Made by a program: the position numbers and the translations under genes. A model generated the notes under the pieces. It did not search any database, had not been told where the DNA came from, and saw only the letters and a program-made list of their open reading frames with translations. A stretch of DNA of 63,794 nucleotides from Gekko japonicus (taxonomy: Eukaryota): assembly GCF_001447785.1 (NCBI RefSeq), contig NW_015172595.1, positions 251,036 through 314,829 on the forward strand, written 5' to 3'. This document shows positions 6,492-49,240 of this stretch, one piece after another. Each line of letters begins with the position of its first letter. Position 1 is the stretch's first letter.

Positions 6492-7339
6492 AGAAGAGAT
6501 TGGATTCATACCCCGCCCTTCACTACCCAAAGGTGTCTCAGAGCGGCTTACAAACTCCTTTCCCTTCCCCTCCCCACAACAGACACCCTGTGAGGTAGGT
6601 GGGGCTGAGAGAGCACTGACAGAAACTGTTCTTTTTCAAGAACAGCTGTGCCAGAATTATTTTATTTATTTTTATTTATTTATTTATCTTTCAACTTTCT
6701 ACCCCGCTCAAACCCCCTAGGGGGTCTCTGAGCGGCTACAGTTAATTAATTATCCTTAACCTATGGCCACAGATACTGGGGGTGGGGACAACCCTACCGG
6801 CACCCAGTGGAGGGACTGGTAGATCTTTCTTCCCAGGTCAGCTTGTCAGCTCGGCGTCTTGGCTTCTGGCTCCTCCCCTTCCGGTGGTCTTTCGGCGGTG
6901 GATCAGCAGGGCCCTTCCGTCGTGTGGCATGCTCCGGCGCGGCTTCGGCTCAGTCCTCCAGGCTCCACCACGCCTGCGCCTTCCATGCTCCCCACGTCTT
7001 CCTGGCTCCGCCTTTCCACCGACGTCTGTTCCACCGTAGATGTTGTGCCTGGTCGCCATCTTTTGCCGCTCGCCGCTTGCCGTTCACTGTTCTCCGATGC
7101 TCCAACAACCCCCTCGGGGGAGGGTGCCCCCTACCATCTAAGGTAGGTACCCATTTATCTACTCGCGGATTGATGTTAATTGTCGCTTTCGAACCACTGG
7201 GTTAGTGGGAGCTGGGACAAGGGCCAGGTGCTCACTCTTGCCCAAGGTCATCCAGCCAGGTGTAAGTGGAGGAGTGGGGAATCAAGCCTGGTTCTCCCAG
7301 ATTAGAGTCCACGCACTTAACCACTACACCAAATTGGCT
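6492..7339 (-). mobile_element. Squam3-like (Ther1/MIR-derived) tRNA SINE, split by a nested SINE at 6657-7238
   Basis: Segments 6492-6656 and 7237-7339 join into the same consensus as the intact copies at 16062, 21358, 42002 and 52811. Confidence 0.85.
6657..7238 (-). mobile_element. 5'-truncated chimeric SINE (Sauria-type head, variable GC-rich core, L2-type tail), copy 1
   Basis: The minus strand carries GTGAGCACC..CCCAGCTCCC..GGTTCGAAAGC..GTAGATAAATGGGTACC, a CCGCTC...GAGCGG 3' hairpin and a (TAAA)n tail. Confidence 0.8.
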
Positions 7340-7540
7340 CTCTCTAGTAGTACCAGAAGGAAGATATTATTCATAAGAGTCCTCAGACTAGAAGCAGATA
7401 AAAATACAAAAAAGTTGGATGCACTCAGTTAAAAGTACATTTTAATGTTTTACCCTGATGTCAAGAGGTAGACCTGGCAAGCCTCAAGGGGATGGGCATT
7501 CCAAAGGCTAGGTGCCACCACTGAAAAAGCCTAGTGTCTC

Positions 7541-7732
7541 ATTGGCCACTTCTGCACTGCCATTTTTGTCACTCATTTGTCTCTATTGCTTCATAGTCGT
7601 CCACCCCCCCCCAATGTGCTTTGCTCTCTCTAGTAGTACCAGAAGGAACAAAACACATGTGGAAAAGGGGGAGGGGACCCAAAGCAATAGGGACAAATGA
7701 GTGACAAAAATGACAGTGCAGAAGTGGCCTAT
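7541..7732. repeat. 51-bp inverted repeat, probably internal to a non-autonomous DNA transposon
   Basis: 7541-7591 and 7682-7732 are reverse complements with 3 mismatches. Confidence 0.85.
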
Positions 7733-8416
7733 TGTCACCCACCACAATTAATGGGTGTGCGCTGAAAAAAAATGCATTATTTTGAATCTAGGCTTTTTTT
7801 CTTTTATTTTGGGGAGGGGTTTGTACTATAATTGCTTATTTGGGGGTAAGACATTACTGGTTCAGATTCAAACCTGTGTGGTTTTTTCTGGTTATGGAGC
7901 TCAGGACCATAATTTTAAGCAGATATTCTATATGAAGGTCTGGGGCAGCTTTCGCAAAGTGAAAGTCACCTCCTTTGCAGACCCTTCCTTCCTTTCTCCC
8001 ATCAGTCTGCCCATTATTCCCTATGGGGGACATTTTTGGAGAGCTGAAGTGGCTGTTTTTCAACTGAATAACACCAAAATTACAGTGGAGTGAGTGTTGT
8101 CTGTCCACTAAAGAACCACCAAGTTTCAAGAGAATTGGACCAAAGGGTTGAGTTCTGTGTGCCCCTGGACAAGTTGCCCCCAGCTCTCTATTTTCCCAGC
8201 CATAGTACTTGCAAAGAACAATAGTGGCAGAGGAACTGAGCAGCGCAGTGGAGAACAGCCTCTGCAGCAGCCAGAGGGAAGTGCAAGTGTCAGAAGATCC
8301 ATGCTGAGACCTTAGAGTTGTGTATTAAGTTTCTCCTGTAGAATCTTAACCTGGCTGCACATCCGAGAGAACCCAAAGCCCAGGCTAGCCCAGTCTCTTC
8401 AGATCTCGGCTGCTAA

Positions 8417-9198
8417 TAGGCCCATAGCCACGGTGGGGCATTTGGGGGTAGAGCCCCACCCTGGGAAGATGCCAGACCAACCCCAGACCCCCCACCCCAC
8501 CTCCACTGCACTGTGCTCCTTACCCCTGCCCCTCTGCAGCCTCCCCGGTTCTTCCAGGGAAGCGCCCTGCTGCTTCTGGTCAGTTTCACTCCCCTCCAAT
8601 CTGTTGTCAGGAGGAGTGAAACTGACCAGAAGTGGCAGGGTGGCTTCCCTTTCCTTCCCCAGCCTCCCTGCCCCCACGGGGTGGGTCAGGGTGTGGGGAA
8701 AGAAGAGAGAGAAAGAGAAAGCATTCCTTCTCTCGCACTGTTTTCTTCCCCAGCCCCCCACAGCAATGCTCCCTTCAAGCTGTGGAGTCTTGTGAGCAAA
8801 AATTCTACTTTGTGAGCCACTGGCATTAAAGTTGTGAGTGAGCAATTTGTGAGCCACTGCATAAATTAGTTTGCTCTGGAGCCATCCTTCCTGAGCTAAG
8901 ACAAAGATGTGTGAGCCGGAGACTAAAAAACTGTGAGCTAGCTCACACTAACTCAGCTTAGAGGGAACACTGCCCCACAGTGGTGGGGAGACTGGGGAAG
9001 GAAAGACAAGCCACCTAAGGGGATGGAGGGGAGTGAAACTGACCAGAAGCAGCAGGGTGGCTTGGGAAGGGAAGGTCCCTAAGTGACCTTTCTGGGGAAC
9101 TAATGTAATCAAATCAGTAACTTAATTAAGTTCCCTGCTCCCCTGCCCCAGCACCCAGGGCCCTGCCCCACCAACCAAAATTTTCTGGCTCAGGCCTG
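8417..9198. mobile_element. Non-autonomous hAT transposon
   Basis: Imperfect terminal inverted repeats (TIRs) TAGGCCCATAGCCA / TGGCTCAGGCCTG. Degenerate 8-bp TSD GCTGCTAA / GCTGTCAA. Confidence 0.7.
8764..8972. mobile_element. ~210-bp hAT MITE family A, copy 1
   Basis: TIRs CAATGCTCCCT / AGGGAACACTG and perfect 8-bp TSD CCCCACAG. Homologous to the copies at 32467 and 41044. Confidence 0.92.
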
Positions 9199-9780
9199 GC
9201 TGTCAAGAAGAGTCAGTTCTGGTCAGTATTTGGATGGGAGAGCACCAAGGAATCCCAGGGTCAATATGCAGAGGCCAGCAATGGCAAACCACCTGTTAGT
9301 TCTTGCCCTTGAAAGCCAACAGGGTCACCACAAGTGGACTGTGACTTTGGATGTTTGTTTATGTTTGGAGGCCTACATTAAATGGCCTTGGTGGCCCTTG
9401 TAAAGGCAGAATGCAGAAAAGTGGGATATAAATGTTGTAAATAAATAAATCCCAGCAATCCTCTCTTTGAGGTCTACTTCTCACTGGGATGGTAGTCCTG
9501 TGTCTGGGCTGTACATTCTCAAATATTTGGNNNNNNNNNNNNNNNNNNNNNNNNNNNNNNNNNNNNNNNNNNNNNNNNNNNNNNNNNNNNNNNNNNNNNN
9601 NNNNNNNNNNNNNNNNNNNNNNNNNNNNNNNNNNNNNNNNNNNNNNNNNNNNNNNNNNNNNNNNNNNNNNNNNNNNNTATCATGTAAACGATAATAGTTT
9701 TATATGTGCAGGAATTTTGTCCCACCTATAGTCTGAAATGGTATAGTCCAGACCAGGGATAGACAACCTTTCCTGTTATG

Positions 9781-12210
9781 AGAACATAAGAAGAGCTCTG
9801 CTGGATTAAACCAATGGGCTATCTAGTCCAGTATCCTGTGGCCCCTAGTTACTCTGGAGGGCCAATGACAAGGCATAGAGGCCAAGGCCTTTCCCTGATC
9901 TTGCCTTCTGGTACTGGTATTCAGAGGTTAACTGCTTCAGAATGTGGAGGTTCCTTTTAGTCTCCATGGCTAGAAGTTGCTGATAGATTTATCCTCCGTT
10001 AATCTGTCTAATCCCCTTCTAAAACTCTTTAGGCCTATTGCCACCACTGCATCCTCTGGCAAAAAATACACATTTTAATCACTGCTTGTGTAAGAAAGTA
10101 TTTCATTTTCTCTATCCTGATTCTGCTGCCCATCAGCCTTACTGGATGCCCTCAACTTCTAGTACTTTGGGGAAAGCACAAAACATTCTCTCTACCCTAT
10201 GCATAATTTTATAAACCTCTAAGGAGACCCTGGTTATCTCTTTTTTAAATTGAAAAGTCCCAGGTTCTTCAGCCTTTCCTCATAGGAAGGGTGCTCCAAT
10301 CCCTTGGTCATCTTGGTTACCCTCTTCTGTACTTTTTCCAGCTCTGCAATATCCATTGTGAGATACAGTGATCAAAACTGCAACTAGTATTCCAAATGAG
10401 GCCATGCCATAGGTCTATATTATAATATTGCCTGCTTCATTTTCAGTCCTTTTTCTAAAAATCCCCAGGATAGAGTTTGCGTTTTTCTCTGCTTTGGCAT
10501 AATGGATTGGCATTTTCATTGAACTATTCACTACAACCCCAAAGTCACTTTCCTTTCAGTCTTAGCAAATTCTGACCCTATTAGCATATACCTAAAGTTG
10601 TGCACCACCTTACACTTGCCTACAATGAACTTCATTTGTCACATTGTTGCCCACTCACTCAATTTGTGTAGATCCTCCTGGAACTTTTCAGTTATCCTTG
10701 GTTTTCATCATGCTAAATAATTTTGTGTCATCTGCAGACTTAGCCAATACACTGCAGTGCTTACCCCCAGTTTCTGATCATTTATGAACAAATTGTATAG
10801 CACCAGCCCCAATACTGATCCCTGTGGAATCCCACCGCTTACTTCCATTGAACAAACTGTCCATTTATTCCTACTCTCTGCTTCCTTTCATTTAACCAGT
10901 TTTAATCTATCAGAAGACCTGTCCTCTTATCCTGTGACTGCTAAGCTTACTCAGGAGTCTTTGGTGAGGTACCTCATCAAAAGCCTTTTGAAAATCTAAG
11001 TATATAATGTCTATCGAGTCACCTTTACCAATCTGTTTCTTCACCTCCTCACAAAACTCAAAAAGGTTAGTGAGGCAGTACTTCCCATTGCGCAAGCCAT
11101 GCTGATTTTCCCTTAGCAAGTTCTGTTCCTCTATGTGCCTAATAATTCTATCTTTGATTACAGTTTGAACTAATTTGCCTGGGAAAGACATTACGCTAAC
11201 TGGCCTGCAATTTCCTGGTTCCCCTCTAGACCCCCTTTAAAAAAACAGTATAACATTTGCTACTCTTCAGTCTTCTGGTACAGTGGCTGACTTTCATGAC
11301 AAGTTACATATACTGGGTAGTCAGTCGATCAACAGTCAGCCATTTGAGATCTCTAAGCATCATTGCAAGTATGCCATCAGTACCTGGACACTTATTAACT
11401 TGTAATTTTCACAATAGGTCTTCATCTCTCATCACCTCAATTTGACTCAATTCTTCAGACTCTCTCCCTAAAAATAGTGGTTGTGGCATGGCTTCATGCC
11501 CCATACATTCCATTGTGAACACATATGCAAAAAATTCATTGAGCTTCTCTGCCATGTCCCCATCTCCCTTTAGCCATCCCTTTGTTCCTTAGTCATCTAA
11601 AGGCCCAGCTGCTTCATTGTGGTTTTTTGCTCTGGATATTTAAAGAAATCCCTGTTGTTCATCCTGATGCTTTTAGCAATCTGCTCCTGAAATTTTATTT
11701 TCACATGCCTAATTATTAACTTACTTTTCTTTTGCCAAACCTTGTGCTCCTTTCTGTTCACTTTGTTGAGCAGACCTTTTTTTAAAAGCCTTTTTGTCTT
11801 TTATGGCTTCCTTTTAAACTTGCCAGTACCTTTCCTAATCTGGAGAACACATTACATGTGGGCTTCAGTTTCCATGGTTTTAAATAGCTTCCAAGCATCT
11901 TCTAGGGATTTTGTTTGCTTGAGTTTCCCTTTCAGCTTCCTTCTAACTAGACTCCTCATTTTTGTAAAGTTTCCTCTTTTGAAATAAAATGTTGCTGTTT
12001 TGGACGTTAGGGGTAATTTCTGTTGACATGAAAGCTGAAATTAACAGCTCTGGAGCCACTGCTCCCAATTGGTTGTAACAGCATCTACATGTCACACTAG
12101 GCTTTGAGCCCTGCTCAGAACCAAGTCCAAGATCACTACCCCACTGGTTGGCTCTTTGAGTAATGAAAAATATCCTGAACTACTACTCCTCTCCCATCAC
12201 GTTACCAAAT
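9781..12210 (-). mobile_element. Decayed CR1 LINE
   Basis: Minus-strand peptide PGKLVQTVIKDRI...NQHGL...YLDFQKAFDEVPHQRLL (CR1 RT). The CR1 3' end (CTTATGTTC) is at 9781-9790. Confidence 0.92.
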
Positions 12211-13833: not shown

Positions 13834-14504
13834 ACATACATACATACATTCATACATGCATATTAGATTTCTATACTGCTCCTTTTTCCGTAGACTCGGA
13901 GCGGTTTACATAGTTTATACAATTATCTAACCTAGGGGCACATAGATAGGGGACGTGAATTCCTTACCCAGGCACCCCCCCTTATGGGCAGTATCTTTTC
14001 TTCTTAGCTTTTTCCCTGGTGGATTCTTCTTTTTGTTGGTACTGGCGATGTTACCGACGTAGGTCTTCAGGTCTTTCCGGCGCAGGCACAGATCTTTCCA
14101 TCTTTTCAACAGTGACACCTCCCGGTTACGGCAGCACACGATCTTGCCGCGCCTCGGCACCCCTCCAGTCAGCCAGCCTTCGCCTCAAATCACTGCCGCG
14201 CCGTCCTCCGGGGCCGATCGCTCCTGCTTGCTGCCTCACTGCTGTTGCCGCCATCTTCCTCACAGCCCGCTCGCCAGCCTGCCGTTGTTGCTGCCGCCGT
14301 GGAACTTCAGCCAAGGGAGTGCCCCCCCACTCCTAGTGAGTAGGTACCCAATTTATCTAATTGCTTAAGGCATTCGAACCGCTGGGTGGGCGGGAGCTGG
14401 GACTAGGACCGGGAGCTCACCCTGGCCATGGTGGGACTCGAACCACCTAAGCTGTTTGGTCAGATGGAATACTGTAGGCATTTACTGCTTGCACCACCGC
14501 TCCC
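13834..14504 (-). mobile_element. Full-length chimeric SINE (Sauria-type head, variable core, L2-type tail), copy 2
   Basis: The minus strand starts GGGAGCGGTGGTGCAAGCAG (A box) ... GGTTCGAGTCCC (B box), then has a Sauria-like body, a CCGCTCC...GGAGCAG hairpin and a (TATG)n tail. Confidence 0.85.
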
Positions 14505-15686: not shown

Positions 15687-15785
15687 AAGTGTTAAATAGT
15701 TTTAAAAACCAGTCTGTTCCTTTCCTTATATGATAACTTCTGCCTATTGGCCATCGGAGGAAATTGACTTGCCAGTGAAAACTGA

Positions 15786-15982: not shown

Positions 15983-16061
15983 TTAAACATTTCTGGTTGG
16001 CAACCCTAATCCTGCCTGTCCTTAGAACTCCTTCAGCTCTTTGTCAGAGGACACACTGTAT

Positions 16062-16353
16062 AAGAAGAAGAAGAAGAAGAGAAGAGATTGGATTTATACC
16101 CTACCCTTCACTACCCAAAGGTGTCTCAGAGTGGCTTACAAACTCCTTTCCCTTCCCCTCCCTACAACAGACACCCTGTGAGGTAGGTGGGGCTGAGAGA
16201 ACTCTGACAGAAACTGCTCTTTTTCAAGAACAGCTCTTATTAGAACTACGGCTTGCCCAAGGTCATCCAGCCAGGTGCAAATGGAGGAGTTGGGAATCAA
16301 ACCCGGTTCTCCCAGATTAGAGTCCGCGCACTTAACCACAACACCAAACTGGC
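16062..16353 (-). mobile_element. Squam3-like SINE
   Basis: tRNA-like head AGCCAGTTTGGTGTTGTGGTTAAG on the minus strand and a (TTC)n tail. Confidence 0.9.
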
Positions 16354-18469
16354 TACACCAAATTGGCCAGTTGTCCTTCAAATGTGTCATGGGCTTTCTG
16401 GTGGGCTCCCTTGCCATCTTGATTGCTTGGGGCCTCCAAACTAGTTCACAAGTTCCATGTATGTAGTTGGTCTTACACGGTGCTTATAAAACTGTAGAAT
16501 TACAAAGACTGAAAGAGATTACACAATGACATTGTCTAGGCCCTCTATTTATATCTATGACAAGCCCCAAACAGGAAGGACATGCAAGGCATTATTTTGT
16601 TTGGAAGGAATCCACATCTATGAACAACCACAGGATTCTTTTTGTCTCCTTTCTCCTTCTGCTCTCTGATTCATCCTTCCTGGCCACATACTGCTCTCAT
16701 CTGTGCTACCCCAATCACATGCTTTGCCATCTGGGCTTTTTTCCCAGCATGGAGAGGCAATTTTGCAACCGTCTCATTTTCCTGGTGTGGTTGTATTTTT
16801 AAAAAAGAGGAGATTTAACAGGGAAAAGGTCATAAAGGAGGGGGGGGATGACCGTCCTTACGCTCATCCTACATTGCCCTGTGGTGAATGGATTAATGTT
16901 AACATCCCAAAAGATTACCTTTGACGTTGCTCCCTGCACTTCCCATCTGGAATGAAAAGATGTTAGTGATGGTGTGACTGACAACCTGAATGATAGTTAG
17001 CACTACAAACACCCTGATTTAGCCCATCTTTTCTCCTTTACTTGCACCAGATGATAAAGACTATCTTAAAACCAGAGTAAAATACTTTGGAGTGTATGTT
17101 TCTCAATGCTCCACCTTACTTCACAAAAGACAAAGTTCCCTTCTTAATAATTTGCTTGAGTCAAGCAAAGGTGCTCTGTGATTTCCATAGCTGTCATAAT
17201 ATGTGGGGAGGAATTGATTTAGAGCCCCAGGCAGGAAATATGGAGGACAGAGCTCCCACCTGCACATAAAGGTGCTATCAGATAATTTCATTAGAACAGG
17301 AAGCCAACTTGTTTCAAGTTCCATTTTGTTACAGACAATGGTGGCTACAATGTTGGATGAAACTCTCAGCAGAACAAGAAGCTTTCAAGCTTGGCTGATA
17401 TCCACCAACAGGAAGCATTATAATGGTAAAGGAGGCATGCTTACAAAATTCTCACCTGCTATTTCTCAGATTTGGGGATTCTGAATTGCAGGAATGTTTT
17501 ACCAAAGTGGCGCCAATGATGTCAGATTCTACTGTTCCTCCAGATCCATAGTTTGAAAATCTCTGATATAAGTAATAATGAATTGAAGAGGAAAAGAGGT
17601 CATTATGTTAAGATAAATCCTGGGATACTGTTGAAAAGCAAAATTATAAATAATCCAGGAAAAAATACATTACTTCCAAAAAATTGTGTGTGTGTGTGCG
17701 CGTGTGTAATTAAAATATTTGTTCTTTCAGCTGGGGAGGAGATAGCAGAATTTACTGAGAAAATAACGGGCTGACACTAGGCATCTATCAAGGAATTAGA
17801 AAGGAGGCATGGCTGGATATGGCAGAAGCTGGGCAAAATGAAAGCCATTGAGATCATGAATGAATCTTAGGCTGTTTGATTAACTAGACACTTTCAGTCG
17901 CCTGTGTCTTTGCCTCTCTCCAGCCGTTTCTCCTGGGAATTCATAGCTCAGGACTGAGCTAAAGCCTATGCTGTACCACTACTTTATGACTCCACAGAAA
18001 GTCTTTTCAGTATTGGTCTATACAGCTTGGGGCAGGACAGGCATGTGTCATTGGCTAGGCACCTGGAAGGGTACATCTGTACACTTGAAGCTGACTTATG
18101 CCCCTTGTCAGGCTAGACCATCTATCCCTGGAGTGCGGTCTACTCTGCCTGGCTTGCCAGAATCTACAGCAAGGTTTTCCCCAGCCCTGCAACATGTAGA
18201 TACAGGGACTGAACCCTGCATCTTCTGCCTTGCTGAGCTACGACTTTCCCTAAGGTCCCCTTCTCTGCTTCTGTGGCCCTTGCTTCTTTTCCCACCCAAA
18301 TCTATTGTTGGCTGGATACCCAAAAGATAGGCTTTTCCTTGTAGAAGACATTTGTATCTTGAACCCCCACCTCCAGTTCCTCATTGCCTTGTTCTTTAGG
18401 TCTGAAAGTCTAGCCAGGTCTCAGTTTTGACTTTTATGTGTTGAATCATTCATCATTGAAGATGAGGGG

Positions 18470-18805: not shown

Positions 18806-21357
18806 CTCATCACTGTCTGTGAGAGTTAGTGTGATGTAGCCATGAAATACATCGGGTGACCTTGGGCCAGTAGTTTCAGCCAAATCTATCTCAGAATTGT
18901 TGTGAAGATGAAAAAGTGGAGGGCAAAAACTGTATATGCTACCCTGAGCTCTTTGGAGAAAGCATGAAATAAAAGACAACTGACAAATAGTGCCCATGTT
19001 TCTCCACTGGAGGGGACCTTGTTCCCTCATACAAAGAGACCCCAAAGCAAATGTATTTGTGCGCTCTCCTTGGTACCTCAGCAGGATTCATTATGCAGGT
19101 ATCCTCCTGACCTAGTGGACCATATAAGTCTCTGATAGTCTGTGACTGTCCAGTGTTCTGGCAGCCCACTTTTATGCTATATGTGGGAGAGTGTTTAAGA
19201 ATCTTCTGTGGGGTAATCCTGGTTTCCTAGCAACTGCTGCACTTTTATTGACACATGGTGAATGTGGGTTGATGAGGAGCTGACAGGAACACTTGGGATT
19301 GGCTGTTGGTTTGTGTTTTTTTATTTTGTTTCAATTGCTATGATTGTACAACTGTTCTGGAATTGGTCATACAGGATTGGGATTGCATGATGCTTCCGTA
19401 ATGCTGATGTCGTGGATGCCCAATTTAGTGAGACCATGGGATTTCCTGGCCTGATAGTGTCTTTTCATCCATTGTTTAATAACAATTGCAGATAATGGAG
19501 GTCCTAGTAGTGTAAGATCCGTTAAGAGAAATATCTATTGTAAGCAGTCACTTTGGATTAGAATCTACAGAAATGAAACCAGTTTAAGCAAATAGAGGAC
19601 CCATGTAAAAACCAATAAAAGTTCCTTCATTTCCTATATTATAGCCTTCATGATTGTTCTTCCAGCCTAGAACAAGACAACCAATCCTGTATGGCAAATA
19701 ATAACACTCATCAATTCCATAGGCCTACCAAGGAAGAGGCTTCATAGCAGGAAAGAGTTCCTTTTACCTCTAGGAGTAAATAAGTGTTTGAAATAGTTGG
19801 CTTCATTGCTATGTACACAAAATTCAGATTCCTTATGTTGTGACCTGCAACTTTTCTATGCAGATAATGTTATGGTTGTCCAGAGGTTGTGTGGGCAGTC
19901 TTTCTTGAGGAAAATACAGGAAGACAAGGGTGTCATGGGCTAGTAAACAATAAAGAGTAGCAGCTCTGGAAACCACACACAGCACACAGATCCCTCACAG
20001 CAGAAGGGACATATGAGGGGCATTACCACCACTCTCCTCTTTTATCTACCAGTTTCCGGCTTCTCGTGATAACCCTCTGAGCTACTGCACAAATGTATCA
20101 TTTTAGAGGGCATGTTTAAGATGATTTGCATGTATGCCAAAAAATATGGAATGCAGATGAAACAAGCATACACAGAAGTCAAGTGTCCTGTATGAGTACA
20201 CTTGTCAAGGAGTTGTGGTTATTGTTTTTTCTTCTTGAATGCATACTTGACAGAAAGTCTGGATTTGCTTCTATGTAACATGTGAATAAGCCAGTTAGCT
20301 TTTGCGCAATGCCAGTTTCAGAAGGAGAGGTTTGCATCAGAGGCCCACACATGCCAGTGTCCAGCCTTCACCCTAGGCCTGAACAGAAGCCCCTTGATAG
20401 ATGCATAAGAAAACAAATGAAAACAAGAATAGCAATATGTACAGTGCTTTTAATTAAGGATGTGTGAATCAAGTGACAGCTCCTGATATTTTGCTGCCTG
20501 GGGCAGTAGAGGCAGCAGATTATGCCCCCCCATCCCCTGCCTTGACTTAATGCCCATTCTCAGCTCCCTCCCCCCCCACCTTGCCTCTGCTTAGAAGCTT
20601 GAGGCTCCAGTCTTACCTCCTCACTCCCTCAGCCCTCTTTAAAAACAATGCAGCAAGCCACACATGCTGTATAGGACTCCTTGAACTCTTGTGAGAGTCC
20701 TTCCTCTCATATGAGTTCAACCACCATTTTTGGTTCTCTTGACAACAATCAAAATGGCAGCCAAATTTTTCCAGAAGGAATCTTGCAGCATTTGGGGGGC
20801 TGGAATGCATGACCGGCTGTGGTATTTTTAAGGAGCCTTGTGGGAGCAAGGAGCTAAATAGGTTTGTGTTCTTCAGCACCCAGACAGGAGGCAGGCTAGC
20901 AATGGGAGGCTGGCAGTGGGTGGAATGCTTCCGAATCTGCTACCAGAGGCAGCTTCTCCAGGTCATTTCATTATACAGCCAGCCCTGCGTGGGTTTTCCC
21001 CCATTCCTTTAGAACTCTAGTTGAATTTCACTTTTCCTGAATTCTAATTTAACTATGAGAATTTTTACAATTCCAGACTGAAGAATTGTCAGTTTCCTAC
21101 CACTTTTAGCTCCTTCGGTTCATTAGCATCCCCCCCTCTTTGTGATTATATGTATGATAGAATAAAGATTCTGTGTGTTGTTTTGTGTGAATGTGTTCCT
21201 ATAGACTTGTACTCCTTGATAACCCACAATATAATCTCACTGAAACATTTGCCCACAAGCACACCAGCAACTTTCTACCCCTCCATATTTTGTATCCAGG
21301 TTAATATGAAGAGCAACCACAATCTGTCCATGTTGCTACTTCTGAACCTACCTGATG

Positions 21358-21643
21358 CTTGGTGTAGTGGTTAGGTGTGTGGACTCTAGTCTGGGAGAAC
21401 CGGGTTTGATTCCCCACTCCTCCACTTGCACTTGCTGGATGACCTTGGGCAAGCCATAGTTCTGGCACAAGCTGTTCTTGAAAAAGAGCAGTTTCTCTCA
21501 GAGCTCTCTCAGCCCCACCTACCTCACAGGGTGTCTGTTGTGGGGAGTGGAAGGGAAAGGAGTTTGTAAGCTGCTCTGAGACTCCTTTGGGTAGTGAAGG
21601 GCGGGGTATAAATCCAGTCTCCTCCTCCTCCTCTTCTTCTTCT
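21358..21643 (+). mobile_element. Squam3-like SINE
   Basis: TGGTGTAGTGGTTAGG...GGTTTGATTCCCC head and a (CTC/TTC)n tail. Confidence 0.9.
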
Positions 21644-21754
21644 TTTTAAAAATTTCTGTACAACCTCTTTGTATAAACAGATTCCACTCCATTTTTTTTT
21701 TTTTAAAAAATCTGATTACTCTTTACGTACCAGCTCATCAATGGTTTGTATATT

Positions 21755-35934: not shown

Positions 35935-37015
35935 GCATGTCTACAACAGCCTGGGTCCTTATGGGGGCCCCTGTGGCAGCATATATCCAATAAGTGCTTC
36001 ACCAGCGACACTGGCTCCAGGTTGAACACCGGATCTGATTCATGGTTCTAGTATTAACCTTTAAGGCCCTAAACAGTCTGAGACCAACATACCTATGGGA
36101 CTGCCTCTCTTGGTATACCACCAAAGAGCATTATACTCTAGAGCAGGGGTGTCAAACATGTGGCCCCAGGGCCGGATCAGGCTCCCGGAGGGTTTCCATC
36201 AGGTCCACAGTGGAACTGGCCATCTCCTGCTTCCAGTTCTGCTGCTGCTGCTGCATCATAGCTTGCTTTGCCAGACTTGCTTAATCGCTCAGCCATTTCA
36301 TGTTCTAACCTGTGTCCTAGACTCAGAACTCTGAGCATGAGACTTTTGTGGTGAATGTCAATAAATCAAAAGCAGGTTTGCAGCTTACAGAGCTAATGTT
36401 TTAAGCATGTTTTTATTTTAAGTAAAAAAAACCCCACCTTTGTGTTTGTGTCCTTTATAAAGTTTGTATCTCCACTACCTGGCATTACATTTTATGACAC
36501 ACATGGCCCGGCCCAACAAGATCTCATTTACGTCAGATCTGGCCCTCATAACAAATGAGTTCGACACCCGTGCTCCAGAGAGCAAAATCTCCTGGTAATC
36601 CCTGGCCCAAAAGAGATCCAGCTGTCTTTAATCACAGCCAGGGCCTTGTCGACCCTGGCACCGGCCTGGTGGAACTCTCTGCCTAGTGACATCCACGCAC
36701 TGTGGGACTTGGTCCAGTTCTGCAGGGCCTGTAAGACAGGGATATTCTTCCAGGCCTATGACTGGTGACAACAACGGTTTTGTCATTTGTCATTGAGCCT
36801 GGCCTCTGTTACTTCCCCACCCCCCACCCCAGAGAAGGGTATAAATTGGTAGTCAATGCCATCTGAACAAACTTTAACTTATATTGTTGTTGTTTTAGCT
36901 GTTTTAAATGTAACGGCTTTAATTGTATTTCATTATTATTTATTGATAAATAATATGTGTTTACTGAGTGTTATACACCGCCCTGAGCCCTTTGGAGGAG
37001 GGTGATCTATAAATT
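35935..37015 (+). mobile_element. L2 LINE 3' fragment interrupted by a MITE
   Basis: HWL...VLVLTFKALNSLRPTYLWDCL and APAWWNSLP motifs, plus a CCGCCCTGAG...GGAGGGTG tail. Confidence 0.8.
36144..36572. mobile_element. hAT-Charlie-type MITE
   Basis: TIRs CAGGGGTGTCAAAC / GTTCGACACCCGTG and TSD CTCTAGAG / CTCCAGAG. Confidence 0.9.
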
Positions 37016-38746
37016 TGGTGGTGGTGCTGGTAGCAGCGGTGGCGGTGGTGGCTGAGTTTGAGGGAGAATGAAATGGGTGAAGGCATTATTACCCCACTGT
37101 GTTCAGTGTCCTTGAAGCACAGACTGTAATGCTACAGGGGTCAGTTTGGTTTGTTCCAGGGCCATTTTCACCTCCCAGTCCACTCCAGAATCAAGGAATG
37201 CATGAATTGATGGCAAGCGTGTCTGAAACTCCCCAAAGAATTTTTTTAACTTCCATTTTCAGATTTTGAGGATCTGGTTTGCAGTGTCAGATTCCAGTTT
37301 CAATCTCTGCAAGACTGTATGTGTCCACCAGTTCTACAAGGTTTCACATTCCAAAAGCTATTGTTGCTATTAAGGATGCCTAGATGGGATTCTTACACAT
37401 TCATTCCCAATAGGAATTCTCTGTGGAGTACAAAATACCATTTCAAGTTGTCCATCGTGTCATCTTTGTCATGCAGGTGTTGGTATGTTTTTTGTAGTTT
37501 TGTTTTTTGGATATGCATTTGGATATTGAACGATAGACATACTATGGAAATGCAGATTGCAACATGTATCAAATATGTGCAAACATGTATAAAAGAGCAT
37601 TAAAATGTGCAGGTTTTTTGCCAAATTTGCAGAGTTGCCAACCTGCAGATGGAACCTGGAAGTCGCCTGGATTTATAACTGATCTCTGGACTACAGACAT
37701 CAGTTCCCCTGGAGAAAATGGCAGCTCTGGAGGGCAGACTCTGTGGGATACCATATGTCTAGGAGAAACAAGTCCTAGAGTGACAGCACATCTCTGCTGA
37801 GATCCCTGCCCTCCCCAAAGTCAACTCTCCCCAGGCTTCACCCTCAGATTTCCATAATTTCCCTGCCCAGAGTTGGCAGCCTTGTGGAAGTGGCTTCAAA
37901 CTCCACGCAGAGTGGAATGGTAAAGGGCACATGCCAGCATTCCCCCTGCTTCACCCTTGTGAGGTTTCAGTGAAAGAGATTAGCACAAATTTGAATATTT
38001 CCTGTTGCAACCTGTGGGACTTCCAAATGCATAACTTGGGCTGGATCGTGCCCTATATTTTTTAAATGATGAATAGTGCTCCAAATCCTCTGAACATCAT
38101 CAGTGATTGTTGTTGTTTTTTAATGTACTTTGCAGCATGGTTTTTTGGCATAAATAATTTTCCAGCTTCTTTAAAAGCACAGACTGACATTTACAATGTT
38201 GTCAGATTTTATGACAATGGTTGGGAGTGATAGAGAAGAGATGGTCTTCCTTTCCTGCCTTACAAGCTGTAAACGGGGTCACTTTAATTAAATCCTGTAT
38301 TAGTAGAGCCAGAATAAGAGGGCTAAACCGCCCAAGGGCCCTGTTTGAAAGACACTGCCCATGTCCTGATTGGAGAGGTTTAATAACAATTAGTTTTAGT
38401 TGCTTAATTGTTAGTGAATATATGGGGATTCATCACTGGGTTCATTTAGACTCAGTGAGGAATTCATATAGGATCTGTAATCTCTTATACTAGAGCTAAA
38501 GCTCCATCTGGAGGCAATAGACTCATAATTTGGCTCCCTTCCTAAATTCTGGTGAGGAAGGGCTGAATAAATACCAAACAACTAGGATGCAAAGGGAATA
38601 TTTTTGAGGGGGAAGAGAGTTCTCAATCATGTTCTAAAATGGCTAAAGTTTGTACTTTTATTGGTATTCCTTTCCAAACACTCTTACCCTTCCACGCCAT
38701 GTAGAATATTCTACTCTTGCAACAGACTCCCAATTTTAAACACATT

Positions 38747-40206: not shown

Positions 40207-40392
40207 GGGGCTGTGGCTCACTAATAGAACATCTGCTTGGAACACAGAAGGTCCCAAGTGCAATGCCTGGCATCTCCAGTTAAAAGGATCAGGAAGTGGG
40301 TGATGTGAAACACCTTCACCTGAAACCCTGGAGAACTGCTGCCAGTCAGAGTACTCAGTGTTAACCTTAATAGCAGTGATCTGATTTAGTAG
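40207..40392 (+). mobile_element. Squam2-like tRNA SINE
   Basis: GGGGCTGTGGCTCA head and the shared body. Confidence 0.8.
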
Positions 40393-43804: not shown

Positions 43805-45413
43805 TCTACCTATTTTGCTAGAACTGGGAGAATTAAAGACAAAATGTTATTGCTATATAACCATGTATAATGCTGTGAAATGCTCATGAGGGAGGACACA
43901 AGATGAGGCTAAGGCATCAGAAGGTGAGTATATGCAGAAGTGGTCAAAGACATATAAATGCCAATGGTGAAAGAAATTTAACATTCGATTTGAACTGGAG
44001 TTGGCTNNNNNNNNNNNNNNNNNNNNNNNNNNNNNNNNNNNNNNNNNNNNNNNNTGAGGTTACTATCACCCAACTTAGGTATTTCTCACAATTGTTTTGA
44101 GCATAAAATAGGAACCCTTGAGCATCTGCCACACAACATTCGCACATTGCAGAGGATAATGGGGCACGTTCTAGGGTTCACACTTGGTGCACCTAAGCCA
44201 TGGAGCAACATGCATGGACTGAAGATGAGACCTAAAACACACCCAATACTCCCTATGGCTGCACAATGTGGGAGACAACTGACAAAAGTGGGCAAGCAGT
44301 CGTCTAGAGAACTGTGTCCACCATTAGTGATCTTCTCATCTAGGAAATCTGTGGCATTCTGTGGAAGTTCAATTGAAATTCCAAACTAGGCCTTCATTTG
44401 AAAAAGATAGGAGGTAGCCATTCAAAAAGAGAAGCCATGTATTGGGCCAAGTCTGGAAGCGTTTTTTGCCTCCTACATTTGGGCTTTGTAATATAGTCAG
44501 GAAAAACATGGCATAGCTTGTATCTATTTGTGGTAAATATTACCAGCAATGACAAGGACCATAAGAGCCAGAAGCAACTAGCCACAGGTTAGAACAGCTG
44601 TGGAGTTACTCTAGAGCCTTAGAAGCAGCCAAGGTTGACCCAGATTTATGAAACTGATGGATATACTTACCATCTCTGGCTCAGCATCAGCTTAATCTTG
44701 TAGCTATAGCCAAGCAGTTGCACCTAAAGCACACTGGAAATCCTGAATGGTCATTCTGCCTGCAGTGCTCCAAGAAAACTAAGCTAGGCTGGATAGAAAT
44801 TGGTAAGGATTTTTTCTCCCCTCCAAAGATCACAGGGCTGAGTAATTGGGAAGCATTTAGGTATGATTATAAATATGCCTGGGATAAAATTAAAGGGTGA
44901 TGATTTTTCTTTGAAATGTCTAGCACGGTAATTTATGAAAAGAAAATTGGGTTTGTGTGTTGGGAAAGAACATCGGGATTCTGTAGCTCACAGATCCACA
45001 TAACTTAGTACTATTCAGCAATTTACAATACTAGATGGATTGTAATCTTGGCAAGGGACCAAAGAACCACTCAGCCAGGAATGCTGAGAACTTTGATGTG
45101 AACATGATCACCAAAAAACTTACTTTGATCGATCTGCTTGCTTACACGCAAGCTGAGCCTTCTTACCAGATGGCCTCTATGTTGATGTCTGTTCAGTATC
45201 TGGCACAAATGCTATGATGAGCAGCTTTGTGTCTGCACAGGAACCTCTTTGCTCTGGGGCAATGGTTAAGTTGTACTTTGGTAAAGCAGTAGTGTTTGTA
45301 TTACAGCCTGAGGCCAATTTTGCACTTGTGCCATCAGCAAATGGATCTTCTCAAGCATTGGAGAAGAGGCATATATTCCCTGGGGTCATGGCTGAGCTGT
45401 TAAATCAACCTAC

Positions 45414-46492
45414 TTGTTCATAAATGATTTGGAGTTAGGAATAAACAGTGAAGTGGCTAAATTTGTGGATGACACAAAATTGTTCAGGGTGTTGAAAAGC
45501 AGGGAGGACTGTGAGACACTCTAAAGGAATTTGTCAAGGATGGGCGAGTGGGCATCAATGTGGCAAATGGAGTTCAATGTGGCCAAGTGCAAAGTGATGC
45601 ATATTGGGGGCAAAAATCCTAACTATAAATACATGTTGATGGGGTCCGAACTGGCAGAGACTGACCAAGAGAGAGATCTTGGAGTCATAGTAGGTAACTC
45701 ACTGAAAATGCTGAGACAGTGTGTGAATGCAATAAAAAACGCCAACACTATACTGGGGATTATTAGGAGGGGAATTGAAAACAAATCAGCCAGTATCATA
45801 ATGTGCCTGTATAAATCAATGCTGCAACCTCATTTGGAGTACTGTGTGCAGTTCTGGTCACCACACCTCAGAAAGGATATTATAGCATTGGGAAAAGTGC
45901 AGAAAAGGGCCACTAGAATGATAAAAGGGTTGGAACACTTTCCCTATGAAGAAAGGTTAAAGTGCTTGGGGCTCTTTAGCTTGGAGAAACGATGACTGAG
46001 GGGGTGACATGATAGAGGTTTACAATATTATGCATGGGAGGGAGCAGATAGAGAAAGAGGTACTTCTCTCCCTTTCTCACAATAAAAGAACTCATGGGCA
46101 CTCAATGAAATTGCTGAGGAGTCGGGTTAGAACAGATAAAAGGAAGTACTTCTTCACCCAAAGAGTGATTAACACATGGAATTCACTGCCACAGGAGGTG
46201 GTGACAGCTACAAGCATGGATGGCTTCAAGAGGGAATTGGATAAACATATGGAGCAGAGGTCCACCAGTGGCTATTAGCTACAAGGTATAGATAGGAACT
46301 CTCAGTCTGGGGCAAGTGATGCTCTGTATTCTGGCTTCTTGGGGGGAGCAACAGTGGGAGGGCTTCTAGTGTCCTGGCCCCACTAGTGGACCTCCTGATG
46401 GCACCTGGTATTTTTGGCCACTGTGTGACAGAGTGGTGGACTGGATGGGCCATTGGCCTGATCCAACATTGGCTTCTCTTATGTTCTTACTT
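45414..46492 (+). mobile_element. 5'-truncated CR1 LINE
   Basis: FINDLELGINSEVAKFVDDT, FNVAKCKVMHIG and [12 protein letters not shown] motifs, ending in a TTATGTTCT tail. Confidence 0.95.
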
Positions 46493-48571
46493 ACCTACCA
46501 CTCACAATTCACCCTCTTTTTATACCTACACAGCTAAATGTCTGGGATTGGATATACTGGGTTGGATCCAAACGAACACTGCTATCCTGGGAGATGCGAA
46601 CCTGCAGAGGGACCCAATAAGGAGCTACACTGGCATATCCTTGAGATACGGGCGCGTATCCCCGAGATGCCCTGGTGGAATATCACAGCAGCGCTGGTGA
46701 AATATCACAGCAGCACTAAATCACTCACAGGTACTGGCGTGGCAATGGCGTGGAGCAATGCTGGTGCAAGTGGCTGCACATGAGGGAAAAGGGGCAGACC
46801 CAGAGGTGTGGGAGGAGTTAGTTTGCTCCCTAAGTTGCCACAGCCCAGGAACACCCTCCAGACCAGCATAAAATTACACCAGCAAAAACCACAGATGCCC
46901 ATACAATAGAAAAGGCAAAACACACCCATCCCTGCTGTGGCCACACCCACAGGCTCCAGCATAACACAGGTTGCTAACTACAGCTGCAGTCAATCAATCT
47001 TCTCTCCAGCACCGGCCAAGGCCCCTCTCCCCCAAACTACATAAATCCCAGCAAGGATGTCCCATAGTCCAGTAGGTAGGGCATGAAATGTAGGACTATC
47101 TTAGGGGTCTCTGCTGTGCACACTTAGAGCTTACAGCATTGCACTTTAGTGGTGGGAGAAGCACAGAGTGCACTGCACTCGGTACTAACACCCAAGGGGG
47201 AGAGCAAAGTCTAGGCTGTGTGGCTAGCATATCTCTCACACTAGTAAGCATAGCATGTGAGAGCTCACAGTGGGACGGAAGGGGTGGAATGTCTGTCTGC
47301 ACCAGCAGATTTTGCAAGTGGTTACATTGTGCAGTTCCTTCAAACAGATGAGACAGAGATTGTGCTCACCACTATGGGTCATTTTAGTAGCACATATTGT
47401 GCATTTTTTGAGAAGTGCCTTGGCACTATGCCTGAGACCACAGGCAGTCAAAACAGCAGAGACCTAGGGTAGGCTGATGAGAGTCACCTCACCCAGTCCG
47501 ATGTATCTCCCACAGAAGAAATGTAATCCCACTGGTACAAAAGGAGAGCAAGGAGGGAAAACCTCGAAGCAAAAAAACCATGACAGAATCGTACTGAACA
47601 GCTACACTGGGAAGCACCTATCCATGCAGTGACAAAAAAGCAACTGCGGTAGAAGGGGGTGCCCCACCTCTGGATCGTGTGACGGTTTAGGCAGGAAAAG
47701 CCATTAGCTCTGGCTCTGGAAGGGAGGGGCACCCCTCAAAGGGGCTTTTTAGCTGCAAAGAAAAATCTTTCCATTTTCTGAAGACAGAAAACGAAGGGGT
47801 AGCCATGAGCTAACAAATGGTTGCATGTGGGCAGTGCTCTTGCTTGTGGAGGGATGGGCATCCTGTCAGCCATATGGGTGACCTTCTTCTGTGGGCTTGG
47901 GGGGTGCTCAGGCCATGTGCCTCTTTGAGGGTTGCACTGTCACTGGGTCTTTCCTCCCAATCTGCTGTGTCTCTGTGGTGAGCAGGAGGTGTGGCAAAGT
48001 GAAGTAGCCAGATCAGTAGGCAGTGCTTTGCTGCACTTGTGTGTGCCACTCAAAGGAATGTCATTGGGTACTGTGGCCTGGTCAGTGGGTGCTGCTGGGG
48101 TTGCTATGGTCTCCAGCATGCTTGCTATACTATCCCTGCCTTGCAGAGGGGCAGGTGTTATTATTTACCCCCCGCAGAATGTCCACAGGAAACAGACCAG
48201 CAGTGCCTCCAACGTGCTGGTGACTAGCCAGCTCCACCATGGCAGTCCTCAGGATTTGGCTGCCCAATGGAAGGATGGAACTTTCTTGCCTTCCTGGTCC
48301 TACTGCAGCCCACTGGTCTCCATGAAATGCTGCTCCTGGAGGACAGGGGACCACGAAGAACGACTTAGGTGGGTCTGCAGTGGGAAGGGTGGAATTGGTG
48401 GAAATCACCAATGTAGCCTGGATCCAACCCCTTTTCAGAGTTCTCTGCTGCTGCAATCAGCAGCATTGATCATGACTGCAAGACCTGATTCATCACCTAG
48501 GTTTGTTAGTGAGTAATGCATCATTGTTTAAAGGAGACAACAAAGTAGTAAGTCTCAACTGTCAAATGTTA

Positions 48572-49240
48572 GGGAGTGGTGGCGCAAGCAGTAAATGAAG
48601 CCTGCATTCCATCTGTCCGAACAGCTTCAGCTGTTCGAGCCCCACCATGGCCGGGGTGAGCTCCCAGTCCAGATCCCAGCTCCCGCTCACCCAGCAGCTC
48701 GAAAGCCCGTATGGGCAAGTAGACAAATGGGTACCTGCTCTTAGAGCAGGGGGGGGCACCCGTCCTTCCCTTCGTGATGGCGTGGCAGCAGCATGAGCAG
48801 CGGAGTAACAGTGGCGGCAGTGGAGAACATGGCGGCAGTGGTGAGGCGAGCGACCGAGTGGAGACTGGGCTGGCAGAGCACGGACGCGGACCGACGCAGT
48901 AAGCCGGAGCCAACCGGACAGAGGCCGGCTGCGGGAGCATGCGCGGACGTGCACTATGGCCCATACCCGGAAAGGAGCCACGACGACCAGAGGAAGACCT
49001 GTGCCAGAAAAAAGATGACGCCAGATTGAAAAGACTTCCCGCAAAAAGAGACTATAACAACGAAGACTCCGCTATGGGTGCCTGTTAGGTTAGTCAATTC
49101 CCCCTCAATTGTATGTGTGTGGCCCTAGGAAGAGATTGTGATAAATTGTATATGCAAAACCGCTTAGAGCCCTTAGGGGGTGAGCGGTCTACAAATTGAA
49201 GGAATAAATAAATAAAATAAAATAAATAAAAGAAAAAAAA
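48572..49240 (+). mobile_element. Full-length chimeric SINE (Sauria-type head, variable core, L2-type tail), copy 3
   Basis: A box TGGCGCAAGCAG (48580), B box GTTCGAGCCC (48633), Sauria-like body, CCGCTT...GAGCGG hairpin (49160-49187) and an A-rich tail. Confidence 0.85.

What the first reader, a model, noticed from the sequence alone, without database searches (positions are those of the whole stretch)
6657..49240. Chimeric SINE family with a fixed scaffold and a hypervariable ~330-nt cassette (three copies)
Seen: 6657-7238(-), 13834-14504(-) and 48572-49240(+) share a Sauria-type head region (full Pol III A/B boxes in copies 2 and 3; copy 1 is 5'-truncated), the A(G)ATAAATGGGTACCT block, a TGTG(G)CC..AGG block and a terminal CCGCT...GAGCRG hairpin with a simple-repeat tail. 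The central GC/purine-rich region is similar in length but not alignable by eye. All three keep many CpGs, which argues against simple ageing. Known: Sauria/Squam1 SINEs normally have an RTE/BovB-type tail, whereas this tail is L2-like. Inference: a LINE-partner-switched SINE with many rapidly diverging master lineages or an exchangeable cargo module. This is the best candidate for an undescribed system here.
Basis: partly seen in the sequence, partly recalled or inferred. Interest (0 to 1): 0.8.

Follow-up and report, generated by a model that had tools for sequence, protein, structure and literature searches.

The report
Long gecko SINE with fast-diverging middle
Three copies of a roughly 650-base mobile element in a gecko genome keep the same start and end but have middles that barely align; public sequencing data show that each middle type forms its own small subfamily, so this is an unusual retroposon family with many source lineages, not a cargo carrier.

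Summary
Copies at 6657-7238(-), 13834-14504(-) and 48572-49240(+) share a Squam1/Sauria-type head, a short hairpin, a TGTGSCC..TAGG block and a stem-loop plus microsatellite tail. Their 373-399-nt middles are T-poor and CpG-rich, and blastn finds no match between them.

New results:
- **The middles are homologous.** They share collinear 7/8-mers (P<=0.005), so they are not foreign cargo.
- **Copy 3's middle is a subfamily.** On Logan contigs of two samples of the same species, it has about 8-100 relatives at 80% likeness or more; the pieces listed are roughly 86-94% identical. Its head and tail have about 700-3300. Per-copy hypermutation is therefore excluded.
- **Copy 3 is a young insertion.** A contig from a related species spans an empty site there.
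- **Copy 3 shows ordinary CpG decay** from an even CpG-richer source.
- **Copy 1 is a retroposition product.** It is 5'-truncated and nested in a Squam3 SINE.

Best reading: a long Pol III SINE moved by an L2-type LINE, with many recently active source lineages. Its ends are held by function and its middle diverges quickly. Why it diverges so fast remains open.

The scan already noted this family on at least seven other pieces of this genome. I rate it a new variant of a known kind, of moderate interest. Dfam and Repbase could not be checked.

The parts
48572..49240 (+). Copy 3, full length (669 nt including tail)
   Evidence: Contigs of two samples cross its two junctions. A related species has an empty site: X13 record 13 places 48558 and 49253 only 47 nt apart.
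48572..48736 (+). Copy 3 head: box-A-like 48580-48590, box B 48632-48642, Squam1-type segment ending in AGACAAATGGGTACCT
   Evidence: About 790-3300 copy equivalents at 80% likeness or more in X1.
48737..49117 (+). Copy 3 core (381 nt). Contains hairpin plus G-run/CACCC at 48734-48761, an 18-nt x2.3 tandem duplication at 48797-48841, ATGGCGGC at 48829-48836 and GGGTGCC near 49075-49081.
   Evidence: From 48777 on, depth is only 8-100 copy equivalents.
49118..49240 (+). Copy 3 block 2 (TGTGTGGCCCTAGG), stem-loop 49159-49188 and (TAAA)n tail
   Evidence: z -2.9; tail at about 690-990 copy equivalents in X1. for the microsatellite.
13834..14504 (-). Copy 2, full length (671 nt): head 14504-14342, core 14341-13943, block 2 plus tail 13942-13834. 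Box B 14444-14434, ATGGCGGC 14254-14247, stem-loop 13905-13875, (ATGT)n tail 13862-13834.
6657..7238 (-). Copy 1, 5'-truncated (582 nt): head remnant 7238-7145, core 7144-6772, block 2 plus tail 6771-6657. ATGGCGAC 7059-7052, stem-loop 6735-6704, (TAAA)n 6687-6657.
6470..7345 (-). Squam3B-type SINE split by copy 1. Its 5' part is 7345-7239 and its 3' part is 6656-6470. About 2-6 nt of target are lost and there is no clear target-site duplication.
   Evidence: Alignment with three intact Squam3 copies from the window.

Best explanation
This is a long (about 630-640 nt plus tail), non-coding, tRNA-headed SINE of a gecko.

**Anatomy.** The 5' 165 nt are a Squam1/Sauria-type head with internal Pol III box A/B. 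The 3' 110-120 nt are a stem-loop plus microsatellite of the kind read by L2/CR1-clade LINE reverse transcriptases.

**Movement.** An L2-type LINE copies it into new sites by target-primed reverse transcription. This explains the 5' truncation of copy 1, its nesting in another SINE, the lack of clear target duplications and the empty site in a relative.

**Family structure.** The family is a bundle of many source lineages that were active at about the same recent time. Selection for transcription and for recognition by the reverse transcriptase holds the head and tail. In the 370-400-nt middle only composition and a few motifs are kept: T-poor, CpG-rich, a G-rich 5' half and an A-richer 3' half. 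The middles are still homologous but have diverged almost to saturation, by substitutions plus slippage-type duplications and deletions of short GC-rich units.

**Shown:** the anatomy, retroposition, homology of the cores, subfamily structure, the young age of c3, and ordinary decay after insertion.

**Inferred:** Pol III transcription, the L2 partner, and the cause of the fast divergence.
For: - **Anatomy and conservation:**
- **Head is Squam1-type:**; the canonical Squam1 body is absent.
- **Tail:** hairpins fold at z -2.7 to -3.6, and by my reading the closing pair changes on both sides (A-U in c1/c3, C-G in c2). The tail HMM hits Squam3 tails. Squam3A uses (TAAA)n.
- **Not coding, no known RNA:** no ORF is conserved. 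Rfam gives nothing even at E 10.
- **Retroposition:** empty orthologous site in organism B (record 13). c1 is 5'-truncated inside a Squam3 copy.
- **Cores homologous:** global scores z 3.2-5.8 against local shuffles, collinear 7/8-mers P<=0.005, with shared islands GGGGCAC, GGCGAGCG, A(A/C)ATGGCG, GGAGCATGC, GAAGACCTG and GGGTGCC.
- **Subfamilies:** single-copy depth is about 90 (X1) and 62 (X2). Relative to that, c3's head is 790-3300x, its core 8-100x, block 2 about 100x and its tail 690-1250x. The listed core pieces carry 7-17 differences per 110-170 nt (roughly 86-94% identical), and changes across the stretch show a normal transition/transversion ratio of about 2.5.
- **Recent activity of several lineages:** core CpG o/e is 0.70-0.85 against a background of 0.20 and 0.04-0.27 in Squam3 copies. 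c3 itself shows CpG decay.
- **Slippage:** the 18-nt tandem duplication in c3, 10-14-nt gaps in its relatives over that part of the core, and excess internal k-mer repeats in the 5' half.
Against: - Substitution at the ordinary genomic rate cannot bring cores to 35-50% identity while the heads stay about 90% alike. That holds all the more because c3's subfamily post-dates a species split with only 4-8% flank divergence. An extra process is needed, and none has been identified.
- Only one short tandem duplication is seen. c1 and c2 cores have none.
- The tail groups c1 with c3 (85% identity), while the core alignment scores rank c2-c3 first. This hints at reassortment of parts.
- Pol III transcription and the L2 partner were not shown directly. 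RNA reads fall on both strands, and this locus itself is silent.
- Copy numbers derived from contig depth are rough.
Confidence: 0.65

Rival explanations
1. Module reassortment. The middle, or the middle plus tail, is repeatedly replaced by template switching or recombination. The donors would be related but long-diverged sequences, for example the 3' regions of different L2 lineages or other long-SINE lineages. The divergence would then be old and merely imported.
For: - Depth boundaries are sharp: a 34-fold drop within 40 nt at 48776/48777, and 11-12-fold steps at 49056/49057 and 49136/49137.
- Depth within the core is uneven (8-100x).
- The tail groups c1 with c3, while core scores favour c2-c3.
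- c2 has a different microsatellite.
- Organism B has the head and hairpin at about 40-540x, but no core, block 2 or tail at 80% likeness.
- Module shuffling among SINEs is documented in molluscs (PMC4758252, listed).
Against: - No donor was found. The two LINE fragments in the window are reverse-transcriptase pieces; the first reads as L1-type by eye and neither has this tail.
- All three cores have the same length, the same composition gradient and the same motif order. Donors would therefore have to be close kin of the SINE itself.
- Sharp depth steps also arise where similarity simply falls below the 80% cut-off.
Confidence: 0.2
2. Hypermutation at each retroposition. Error-prone reverse transcription, RNA or DNA editing, or another diversity-generating copying step would scramble the core every time the element moves.
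For: Cores differ between all copies seen here and, according to other unchecked notes of this scan, elsewhere in the genome.
Against: - c3's core has tens of relatives, and the listed pieces are roughly 86-94% identical to it, with an ordinary, CpG-dominated substitution spectrum.
- Merging A with G, or C with T, does not rescue the core alignments.
Confidence: 0.03
3. The element is not a Pol III SINE. It would be a non-autonomous element driven by Pol II, whose CpG-island-like middle acts as the promoter, with a conserved A(A/C)ATGGCG(G/A)C motif resembling a YY1 site. The tRNA-like head would be a relic.
For: - Core CpG o/e is 0.70-0.85 and was higher in the source.
- The ATGGCG motif is kept at the same position in all three cores.
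- The element is at the upper length limit for SINEs (<700 bp, PMC3531059).
- RNA reads per DNA copy are about 10-fold higher on the core than on the head (my ratio depths; rough).
Against: - Both full-length copies start at the same GGGAG, 8 nt upstream of the box-A-like element. Box B is intact.
- The sense strand has no TTTT run in any copy.
- The head is conserved far better than a relic would be.
- The resemblance to a YY1 site is from memory, not tested.
Confidence: 0.07
4. Simple ageing of copies that all derive from one consensus.
For: Heads differ by 11-20% between copies.
Against: - Cores keep CpG at 3.5-4 times the background level.
- c3 is younger than a species split with 4-8% divergence.
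- The core is 8-400-fold less populated than the head at the same likeness cut-off.
Confidence: 0.02

Closest known systems
Squam1 (Sauria) SINE of squamate reptiles
   Same: Both have a tRNA-related head with box B. The following segment is also shared: GGGTGAGCTCCC..CCCAGCTCC..CAGCGGTTCGAA..GTAGATAAATRGGTACC, followed by a short hairpin. This was checked against the published consensus and by motif hits.
   Different: Squam1 is about 350 nt, with a different body and a Bov-B/RTE-type end of (ACCTTT)n. The gecko element is about 650 nt, lacks the Squam1 body and ends in a stem-loop plus (TAAA)n or (ATGT)n. The first 60 nt of the head also differ.
Squam3 (Ther1/MIR-derived) SINE, with L2-partnered SINEs such as Anolis SINE 2
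   Same: The 3' end has the same architecture: a CCGC..GCGG stem-loop, an ATAAAT-like box and a microsatellite. Squam3A uses (TAAA)n. Anolis SINE 2 is catalogued with an L2 partner.
   Different: The head and body are unrelated. Squam3 is 220-270 nt. Copies in this window are CpG-depleted (o/e 0.04-0.27) and carry (CTT)n tails.
Modular ('jigsaw') SINEs of molluscs and composite elements with variable middles (SVA VNTR)
   Same: The element is built from modules of different origin. The middle is GC-rich and varies between copies, while the ends needed for mobilisation stay fixed.
   Different: In known SINE superfamilies the central domain is the conserved part and the ends vary (PMC4758252 abstract). 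Here it is the reverse. The SVA middle is a true tandem array (my knowledge), whereas only one 18-nt duplication is seen here.

Membership tests
SINE (SINEBase definition, PMC3531059) | Relatively short (<700 bp) and non-autonomous | tested here: met
   Copies are 582-671 nt with the tail. No ORF is conserved between copies, and the protein word search found nothing.
SINE (SINEBase definition, PMC3531059) | [quoted passage not shown] | tested here: inconclusive
   Box B is perfect in c2 and has one mismatch in c3. The box-A-like element is 9/11. Both full-length copies share the same 5' end, and there is no TTTT in the sense strand. Rfam's tRNA model does not match the head. No Pol III data are available, and the RNA reads are not strand-informative.
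SINE (SINEBase definition, PMC3531059) | Reverse transcription by a partner LINE (retroposition) | tested here: met
   There is an empty orthologous site in a related species for c3. c1 is 5'-truncated and nested in a Squam3 copy. The 3' stem-loop and microsatellite are conserved. The partner itself was not identified.
Squam1 / Sauria SINE | Squam1 head and the adjoining conserved segment | tested here: met
   By eye against the published consensus, about 75-80% identical over about 110 nt from box B to GGTACC. Consensus motifs hit with 0-2 mismatches. The first ~60 nt differ.
Squam1 / Sauria SINE | Squam1 body (..GGCTTAGTCATGCTGGCCACATGACC..) and Bov-B-type (ACCTTT)n tail | tested here: not met
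   The body motif has 0 matches with up to 3 mismatches. The tails are (TAAA)n or (ATGT)n behind a stem-loop.
L2-mobilised SINE | 3' end shared with an L2-clade LINE of the same genome | not testable with these tools
   There is only indirect support: similarity to Squam3 tails (E 2.6e-4). No L2 3' end lies in the window, and no repeat library (Dfam/Repbase) is on hand.

The most novel reading that the evidence does not exclude
The middle of this SINE would be a true fast-evolving cassette. In transcriptionally active, unmethylated source copies, the G-rich, CpG-island-like core would mutate many times faster than the genome, through transcription-associated damage and slippage. Lineages that change it might also be favoured because they escape sequence-specific silencing (piRNAs or zinc-finger repressors). 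The family would then persist as a swarm of dozens of concurrently active lineages with fixed ends. That would be a retroposon counterpart of antigenic variation, which I have not seen described for SINEs.
Probability: 0.15. Interest if true: 0.75.

Novelty: new variant of a known kind. Interest (0 to 1): 0.5.

Why it matters
In known SINE superfamilies the central domain is the conserved part and the ends vary. A family with the reverse pattern, and with many source lineages active at once, runs against the usual picture of one or a few master genes.

It would give a natural system for three questions:
- which parts of a SINE RNA the Pol III machinery and an L2-type reverse transcriptase really need;
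- how fast an unconstrained, CpG-rich transcribed segment can change;
- whether host silencing drives such change.

There is also a practical point. Repeat annotation of gecko genomes will split or miss these elements unless the variable middle is modelled.

Tried and rejected
- **A/G or C/T hyper-editing.** Merging purines or pyrimidines did not improve the core alignments more than control mergers did.
- **Tandem-array (VNTR) core.** TRF finds only one 18-nt x2.3 duplication in c3 and nothing in the c1 or c2 cores. Only modest cryptic simplicity remains.
- **Coding cargo.** ORFs occur in all frames on both strands, as expected for a T-poor sequence, and none is conserved. The 160-aa antisense ORF of c3 has no relatives in the word search. 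I had also hoped this search would harvest further copies; it did not.
- **Known structured RNA or rRNA origin.** Rfam gives nothing at gathering score, and only chance-level hits at E up to 10.
- **Whole-element RNA structure.** Minimum free energies are no better than shuffles (z +1.0, +1.0, -1.4).
- **The GGGGCACC..GGGTGCC bracket.** It is conserved in sequence but shows no double changes. It forms in the minimum-energy fold of c1, apparently in c2 and not in c3. GGGCACCC can also pair locally with GGGUACC.
- **The hairpin after GGGTACC.** It forms in all three copies, with one compensatory A-U to G-C change by my reading, but it is not more stable than shuffles.
- **A partner LINE in the window.** The two LINE fragments are reverse-transcriptase pieces. 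The first reads as L1-like by its C-terminal cysteine motif (by eye). Neither has this tail.
- **More copies in the window.** nhmmer profiles of the head, core and tail find none.
- **Literature.** No description of this long family was found. This does not cover Repbase or Dfam.
Full report
**What is there**

The three stretches are real copies of one element:
- c1: 6657-7238, minus strand, 582 nt
- c2: 13834-14504, minus strand, 671 nt
- c3: 48572-49240, plus strand, 669 nt

blastn and nhmmer profiles of the head, core and tail find no further copy in the 63.8-kb window. None of the assembly gaps inside the finding's range lies within 2.3 kb of a copy. A 14-N run at 49457-49470 is 217 nt downstream of c3. 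The copies are independent insertions, so continuity across the gaps has no bearing on the finding. Contigs from two public samples cross the two junctions of c3 (records 1 and 23).

**Anatomy**

Both c2 and c3 begin with GGGAG(C/T)GGTGG.
- The box-A-like element TGG(T/C)GCAAGCA is 9/11 against TRGCNNARNGG by my reading.
- Box B is perfect in c2 (GGTTCGAGTCC) and has one mismatch in c3.
- The segment GGGTGAGCTCCC..CCCAGCTCCC..CAGCGGTTCGAA..GTAGATAAATGGGTACC follows. c1 starts inside this segment, so it is 5'-truncated.
- After GGGTACC comes a 6-7-bp hairpin: CCUACC/GGUAGG in c1, CCUACUC/GAGUGGG in c2 and CCUGCUC/GAGCAGG in c3. One position changes on both sides.
- A G-run plus CAC(C/T)CC comes next, then the 373-399-nt core.
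- After the core come GGGTGCC, the block TGTG(G/C)CC.TAGG, an AT-rich linker, a stem-loop (A/G)CCGCT..GAGC(G/A)G and a microsatellite. The microsatellite is (TAAA)n in c1 and c3 and (ATGT)n in c2.

The tail stem-loops fold better than dinucleotide shuffles (z -2.9, -2.7, -3.6). Their closing pair is A-U in c1 and c3 and C-G in c2. The hairpin after GGGTACC and whole-element folds are not better than shuffles.

**Numbers for the claim 'fixed scaffold, variable middle'**

- Head identity is 86% (c1/c2), 77% (c1/c3) and 89% (c2/c3) over aligned columns. The c1/c3 tail is 85% identical.
- In E-INS-i alignments the core runs at about 30-50% identity per 40 columns, counting gaps as mismatches. blastn reports no core-to-core match.
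- Core composition is the same in all three: A 25-27%, C 23-27%, G 34-36%, T 11-14%. The 5' half is G-rich (41-43% G) and the 3' half is A-richer in c2 and c3.
- Core CpG o/e is 0.70-0.85. The rest of the window is at 0.20, and five Squam3 SINE pieces are at 0.04-0.27.

**The cores are homologous, not foreign cargo**

- Global alignment scores exceed controls shuffled within 25-nt blocks, which preserve the composition gradient. The z values are 3.2, 4.6 and 5.8, and 2, 0 and 0 of 300 shuffles reach the observed score.
- The scores also exceed those of the reversed sequences.
- Shared 7-mers lying within 40 nt of the diagonal are 3.8-6 times the control number (0 of 200 controls reach them). 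Shared 8-mers give P<=0.005.
- The shared islands come in the same order: GGGGCAC, GGCGAGCG, A(A/C)ATGGCG(G/A)C, GGAGCATGC (c1 and c3), GAAGACCTG/GAAAGACC and GGGTGCC.
- Merging A with G, or C with T, does not rescue the alignment beyond control mergers. Simple A-to-G or C-to-T hyper-editing is therefore not the cause.

**Family-level evidence from public runs**

I laid contigs of two DNA samples of the same species (X1, X2), one DNA sample of a differently labelled relative (X13, 'organism B') and one RNA run (X20) on 48257-49456 at 80% likeness or more. Single-copy flank depth is about 90 (X1), 62 (X2) and 10.8 (X13).

Depth relative to the single-copy flank:

| Segment | Position | X1 | X2 |
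|---|---|---|---|
| Head | 48577-48736 | 790-3300x | 660-2600x |
| Hairpin, G-run and CACCC | 48737-48776 | about 1500x | about 990x |
| Core | 48777-49056 | 8-98x | 11-79x |
| Block 2 region | 49057-49136 | 90-103x | 103-132x |
| Tail | 49137-49216 | 690-990x | 830-1250x |

Four conclusions follow.

1. **c3's core is a subfamily.** It is neither unique nor common. It defines a subfamily of tens of copies. The listed pieces carry 7-17 differences per 110-170 nt (roughly 86-94% identical). The changes recorded across the whole stretch have a transition/transversion ratio of about 2.5. This excludes scrambling of the core at every retroposition.
2. **Other cores exist.** At the same cut-off the head and tail are shared by about 10-400 times more copies than this core. 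Reads that leave c3 just after the CACCC continue with a different, poorly agreeing GGCGGCGGCGG-type sequence (loose end at 48765, agreement 0.62).
3. **c3 is a young insertion.** A single contig of organism B aligns to 48318-48558 and to 49253-49456 with 47 nt between, where the window has 694 nt. That is an empty site. The flanks differ by 8.3% and 4.4%, so c3 inserted after that split. Organism B has the head at about 40-540x and the hairpin bin at about 100x. It has nothing at 80% likeness for the core and block 2, and less than one copy equivalent for the tail.
4. **c3 decays normally.** Of the 22 best-supported sites where most family members differ from c3, 13 restore a CpG, including 8 of 12 in the core. 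c3 therefore decays as methylated DNA does, and its source was even richer in CpG (at least 36 CpGs in 381 nt).

Absolute copy numbers from unitig depth are rough, and probably low for the head.

**Retroposition of c1**

Aligning the flanks of c1 with three intact Squam3B-type SINEs from the window shows where it inserted. c1 sits between ..GACCTTGGGCAAG and (CC)ATAGTTCTGGCAC.. of such a SINE. About 2-6 target bases are lost and there is no clear target-site duplication. This, the 5' truncation and the stem-loop/microsatellite end fit target-primed reverse transcription by an L2/CR1-clade enzyme. That last step rests on established knowledge of stringent-type LINE/SINE pairs and is an inference here.

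**Comparison with what is known**

- The catalogued squamate SINEs are Squam1 (= Sauria), Squam2 and Squam3, about 190-350 nt long (PMC10702118).
- The published Squam1 consensus (PMC10670947, supplementary file 1) matches the gecko element from box B to GGTACC, at about 75-80% by eye. Its motifs GGGTGAGCTCCCG and GTAGATAAATAGGTACC hit the copies with 0-2 mismatches.
- The Squam1 body motif has no match in the window. Squam1 ends in (ACCTTT)n, and its listed partner is Bov-B (PMC3747384).
- The tail here resembles Squam3 tails present in the same window. The tail profile hits 42097-42011 at E 2.6e-4. (TAAA)n is the Squam3A tail (PMC7983390). Squam3 derives from Ther1/MIR, whose partner is L2 (my knowledge).
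- The partner-switch reading is therefore reasonable, but it has not been tested against an actual L2 element.
- SINEBase defines SINEs as shorter than 700 bp (PMC3531059), so this element is at the upper limit.
- I found no paper describing this family. Dfam and Repbase could not be consulted.

**How the middle diverged**

Three readings are excluded: ageing from a single consensus, unrelated cargo, and hypermutation at each copying step.

What remains is a family with many source lineages that were active recently and in parallel, all three cores keeping CpG at 3.5-4 times the background. These lineages have nearly the same ends but cores diverged almost to saturation.

Ordinary germline substitution is too slow for this if the lineages are young. 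So either the lineages are old and persisted at low copy number, or parts are reassorted among lineages or taken from LINE 3' regions, or the core mutates faster in active source copies.

- **Evidence for a slippage contribution.** c3 has an 18-nt x2.3 tandem duplication at 48797-48841. Its relatives differ by 10-14-nt gaps over that part of the core. The 5' halves of the cores have excess internal k-mer repeats (P 0.007-0.03).
- **Hints of reassortment.** The depth steps are sharp and uneven. The tail groups c1 with c3, while core scores favour c2-c3.

Neither line of evidence is decisive with three copies.

**RNA**

Reads of X20 cover family members on both strands. The unique flanks of this locus have none, and no read is 99% identical to c3, so this copy looks silent. 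RNA depth per DNA copy equivalent is about ten times higher on the core than on the head. This is my ratio values; it is rough and may simply reflect how short unitigs are counted.

**Earlier notes of this scan**

The same family was noted on at least seven other pieces of this genome. One follow-up (s1-832976) left the cause of the divergence open. These are unchecked AI notes. I used them only as an indication that the family recurs across the genome.

**Verdict**

This is a new variant of a known kind, of moderate interest.

Noticed in passing
window 16050-16400(-), 21290-21650(+), 31230(+), 42054(-), 52790-53140(-), 6470-7345(-): At least six Squam3B-type (MIR/Ther1-like) SINEs, several with (CTT)n/(CTC)n tails. 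All are strongly CpG-depleted (o/e 0.04-0.27). One of them is the target of copy 1.
   Followed up: partly
window 680-3600(+): A degraded LINE: four consecutive ORFs, one with an RVT_1 match (E 2e-14). A C-terminal cysteine-rich motif reads as L1-type by eye. It is not the partner of the long SINE.
   Followed up: partly
window 60040-61095(+): A second reverse-transcriptase fragment (351-aa ORF, RVT_1 E 2.5e-12), interrupted by a 13-N run at 60865-60877. Its type was not determined.
   Followed up: no
window 3650-4300(+): A repeat-like stretch downstream of the L1 fragment. It contains GCAGATGGCGGCATGGTGAGC, which resembles the ATGGCGGC island of the SINE cores, and AATAAA near its end. It may be an LTR or another element. 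Not analysed.
   Followed up: no
window 54598-54669(+) and 40207-40278(+): A tRNA-Thr(TGT) gene (Rfam 52 bits, also found by ARAGORN) and a weaker tRNA-like match (32 bits, just above the gathering score).
   Followed up: no
window 36830-37060(+): Another element end with a similar stem-loop (CACCGCCCTGAG..GGAGGGTGATCTATAAAT), followed by a (GGT)n-type microsatellite. It may be a different L2/CR1-type tail.
   Followed up: no
window 48297-48416: A short, high-copy repeat just upstream of c3, at about 130-450 copy equivalents in X1. It is also abundant in organism B.
   Followed up: no
window 48607 joined to 49157 (contigs of X1 and X2): A contig at about single-copy depth, seen in both samples, joins the first 36 nt of the head to the tail through 14 other letters. 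This is a deletion derivative of the long SINE somewhere else in the genome.
   Followed up: no
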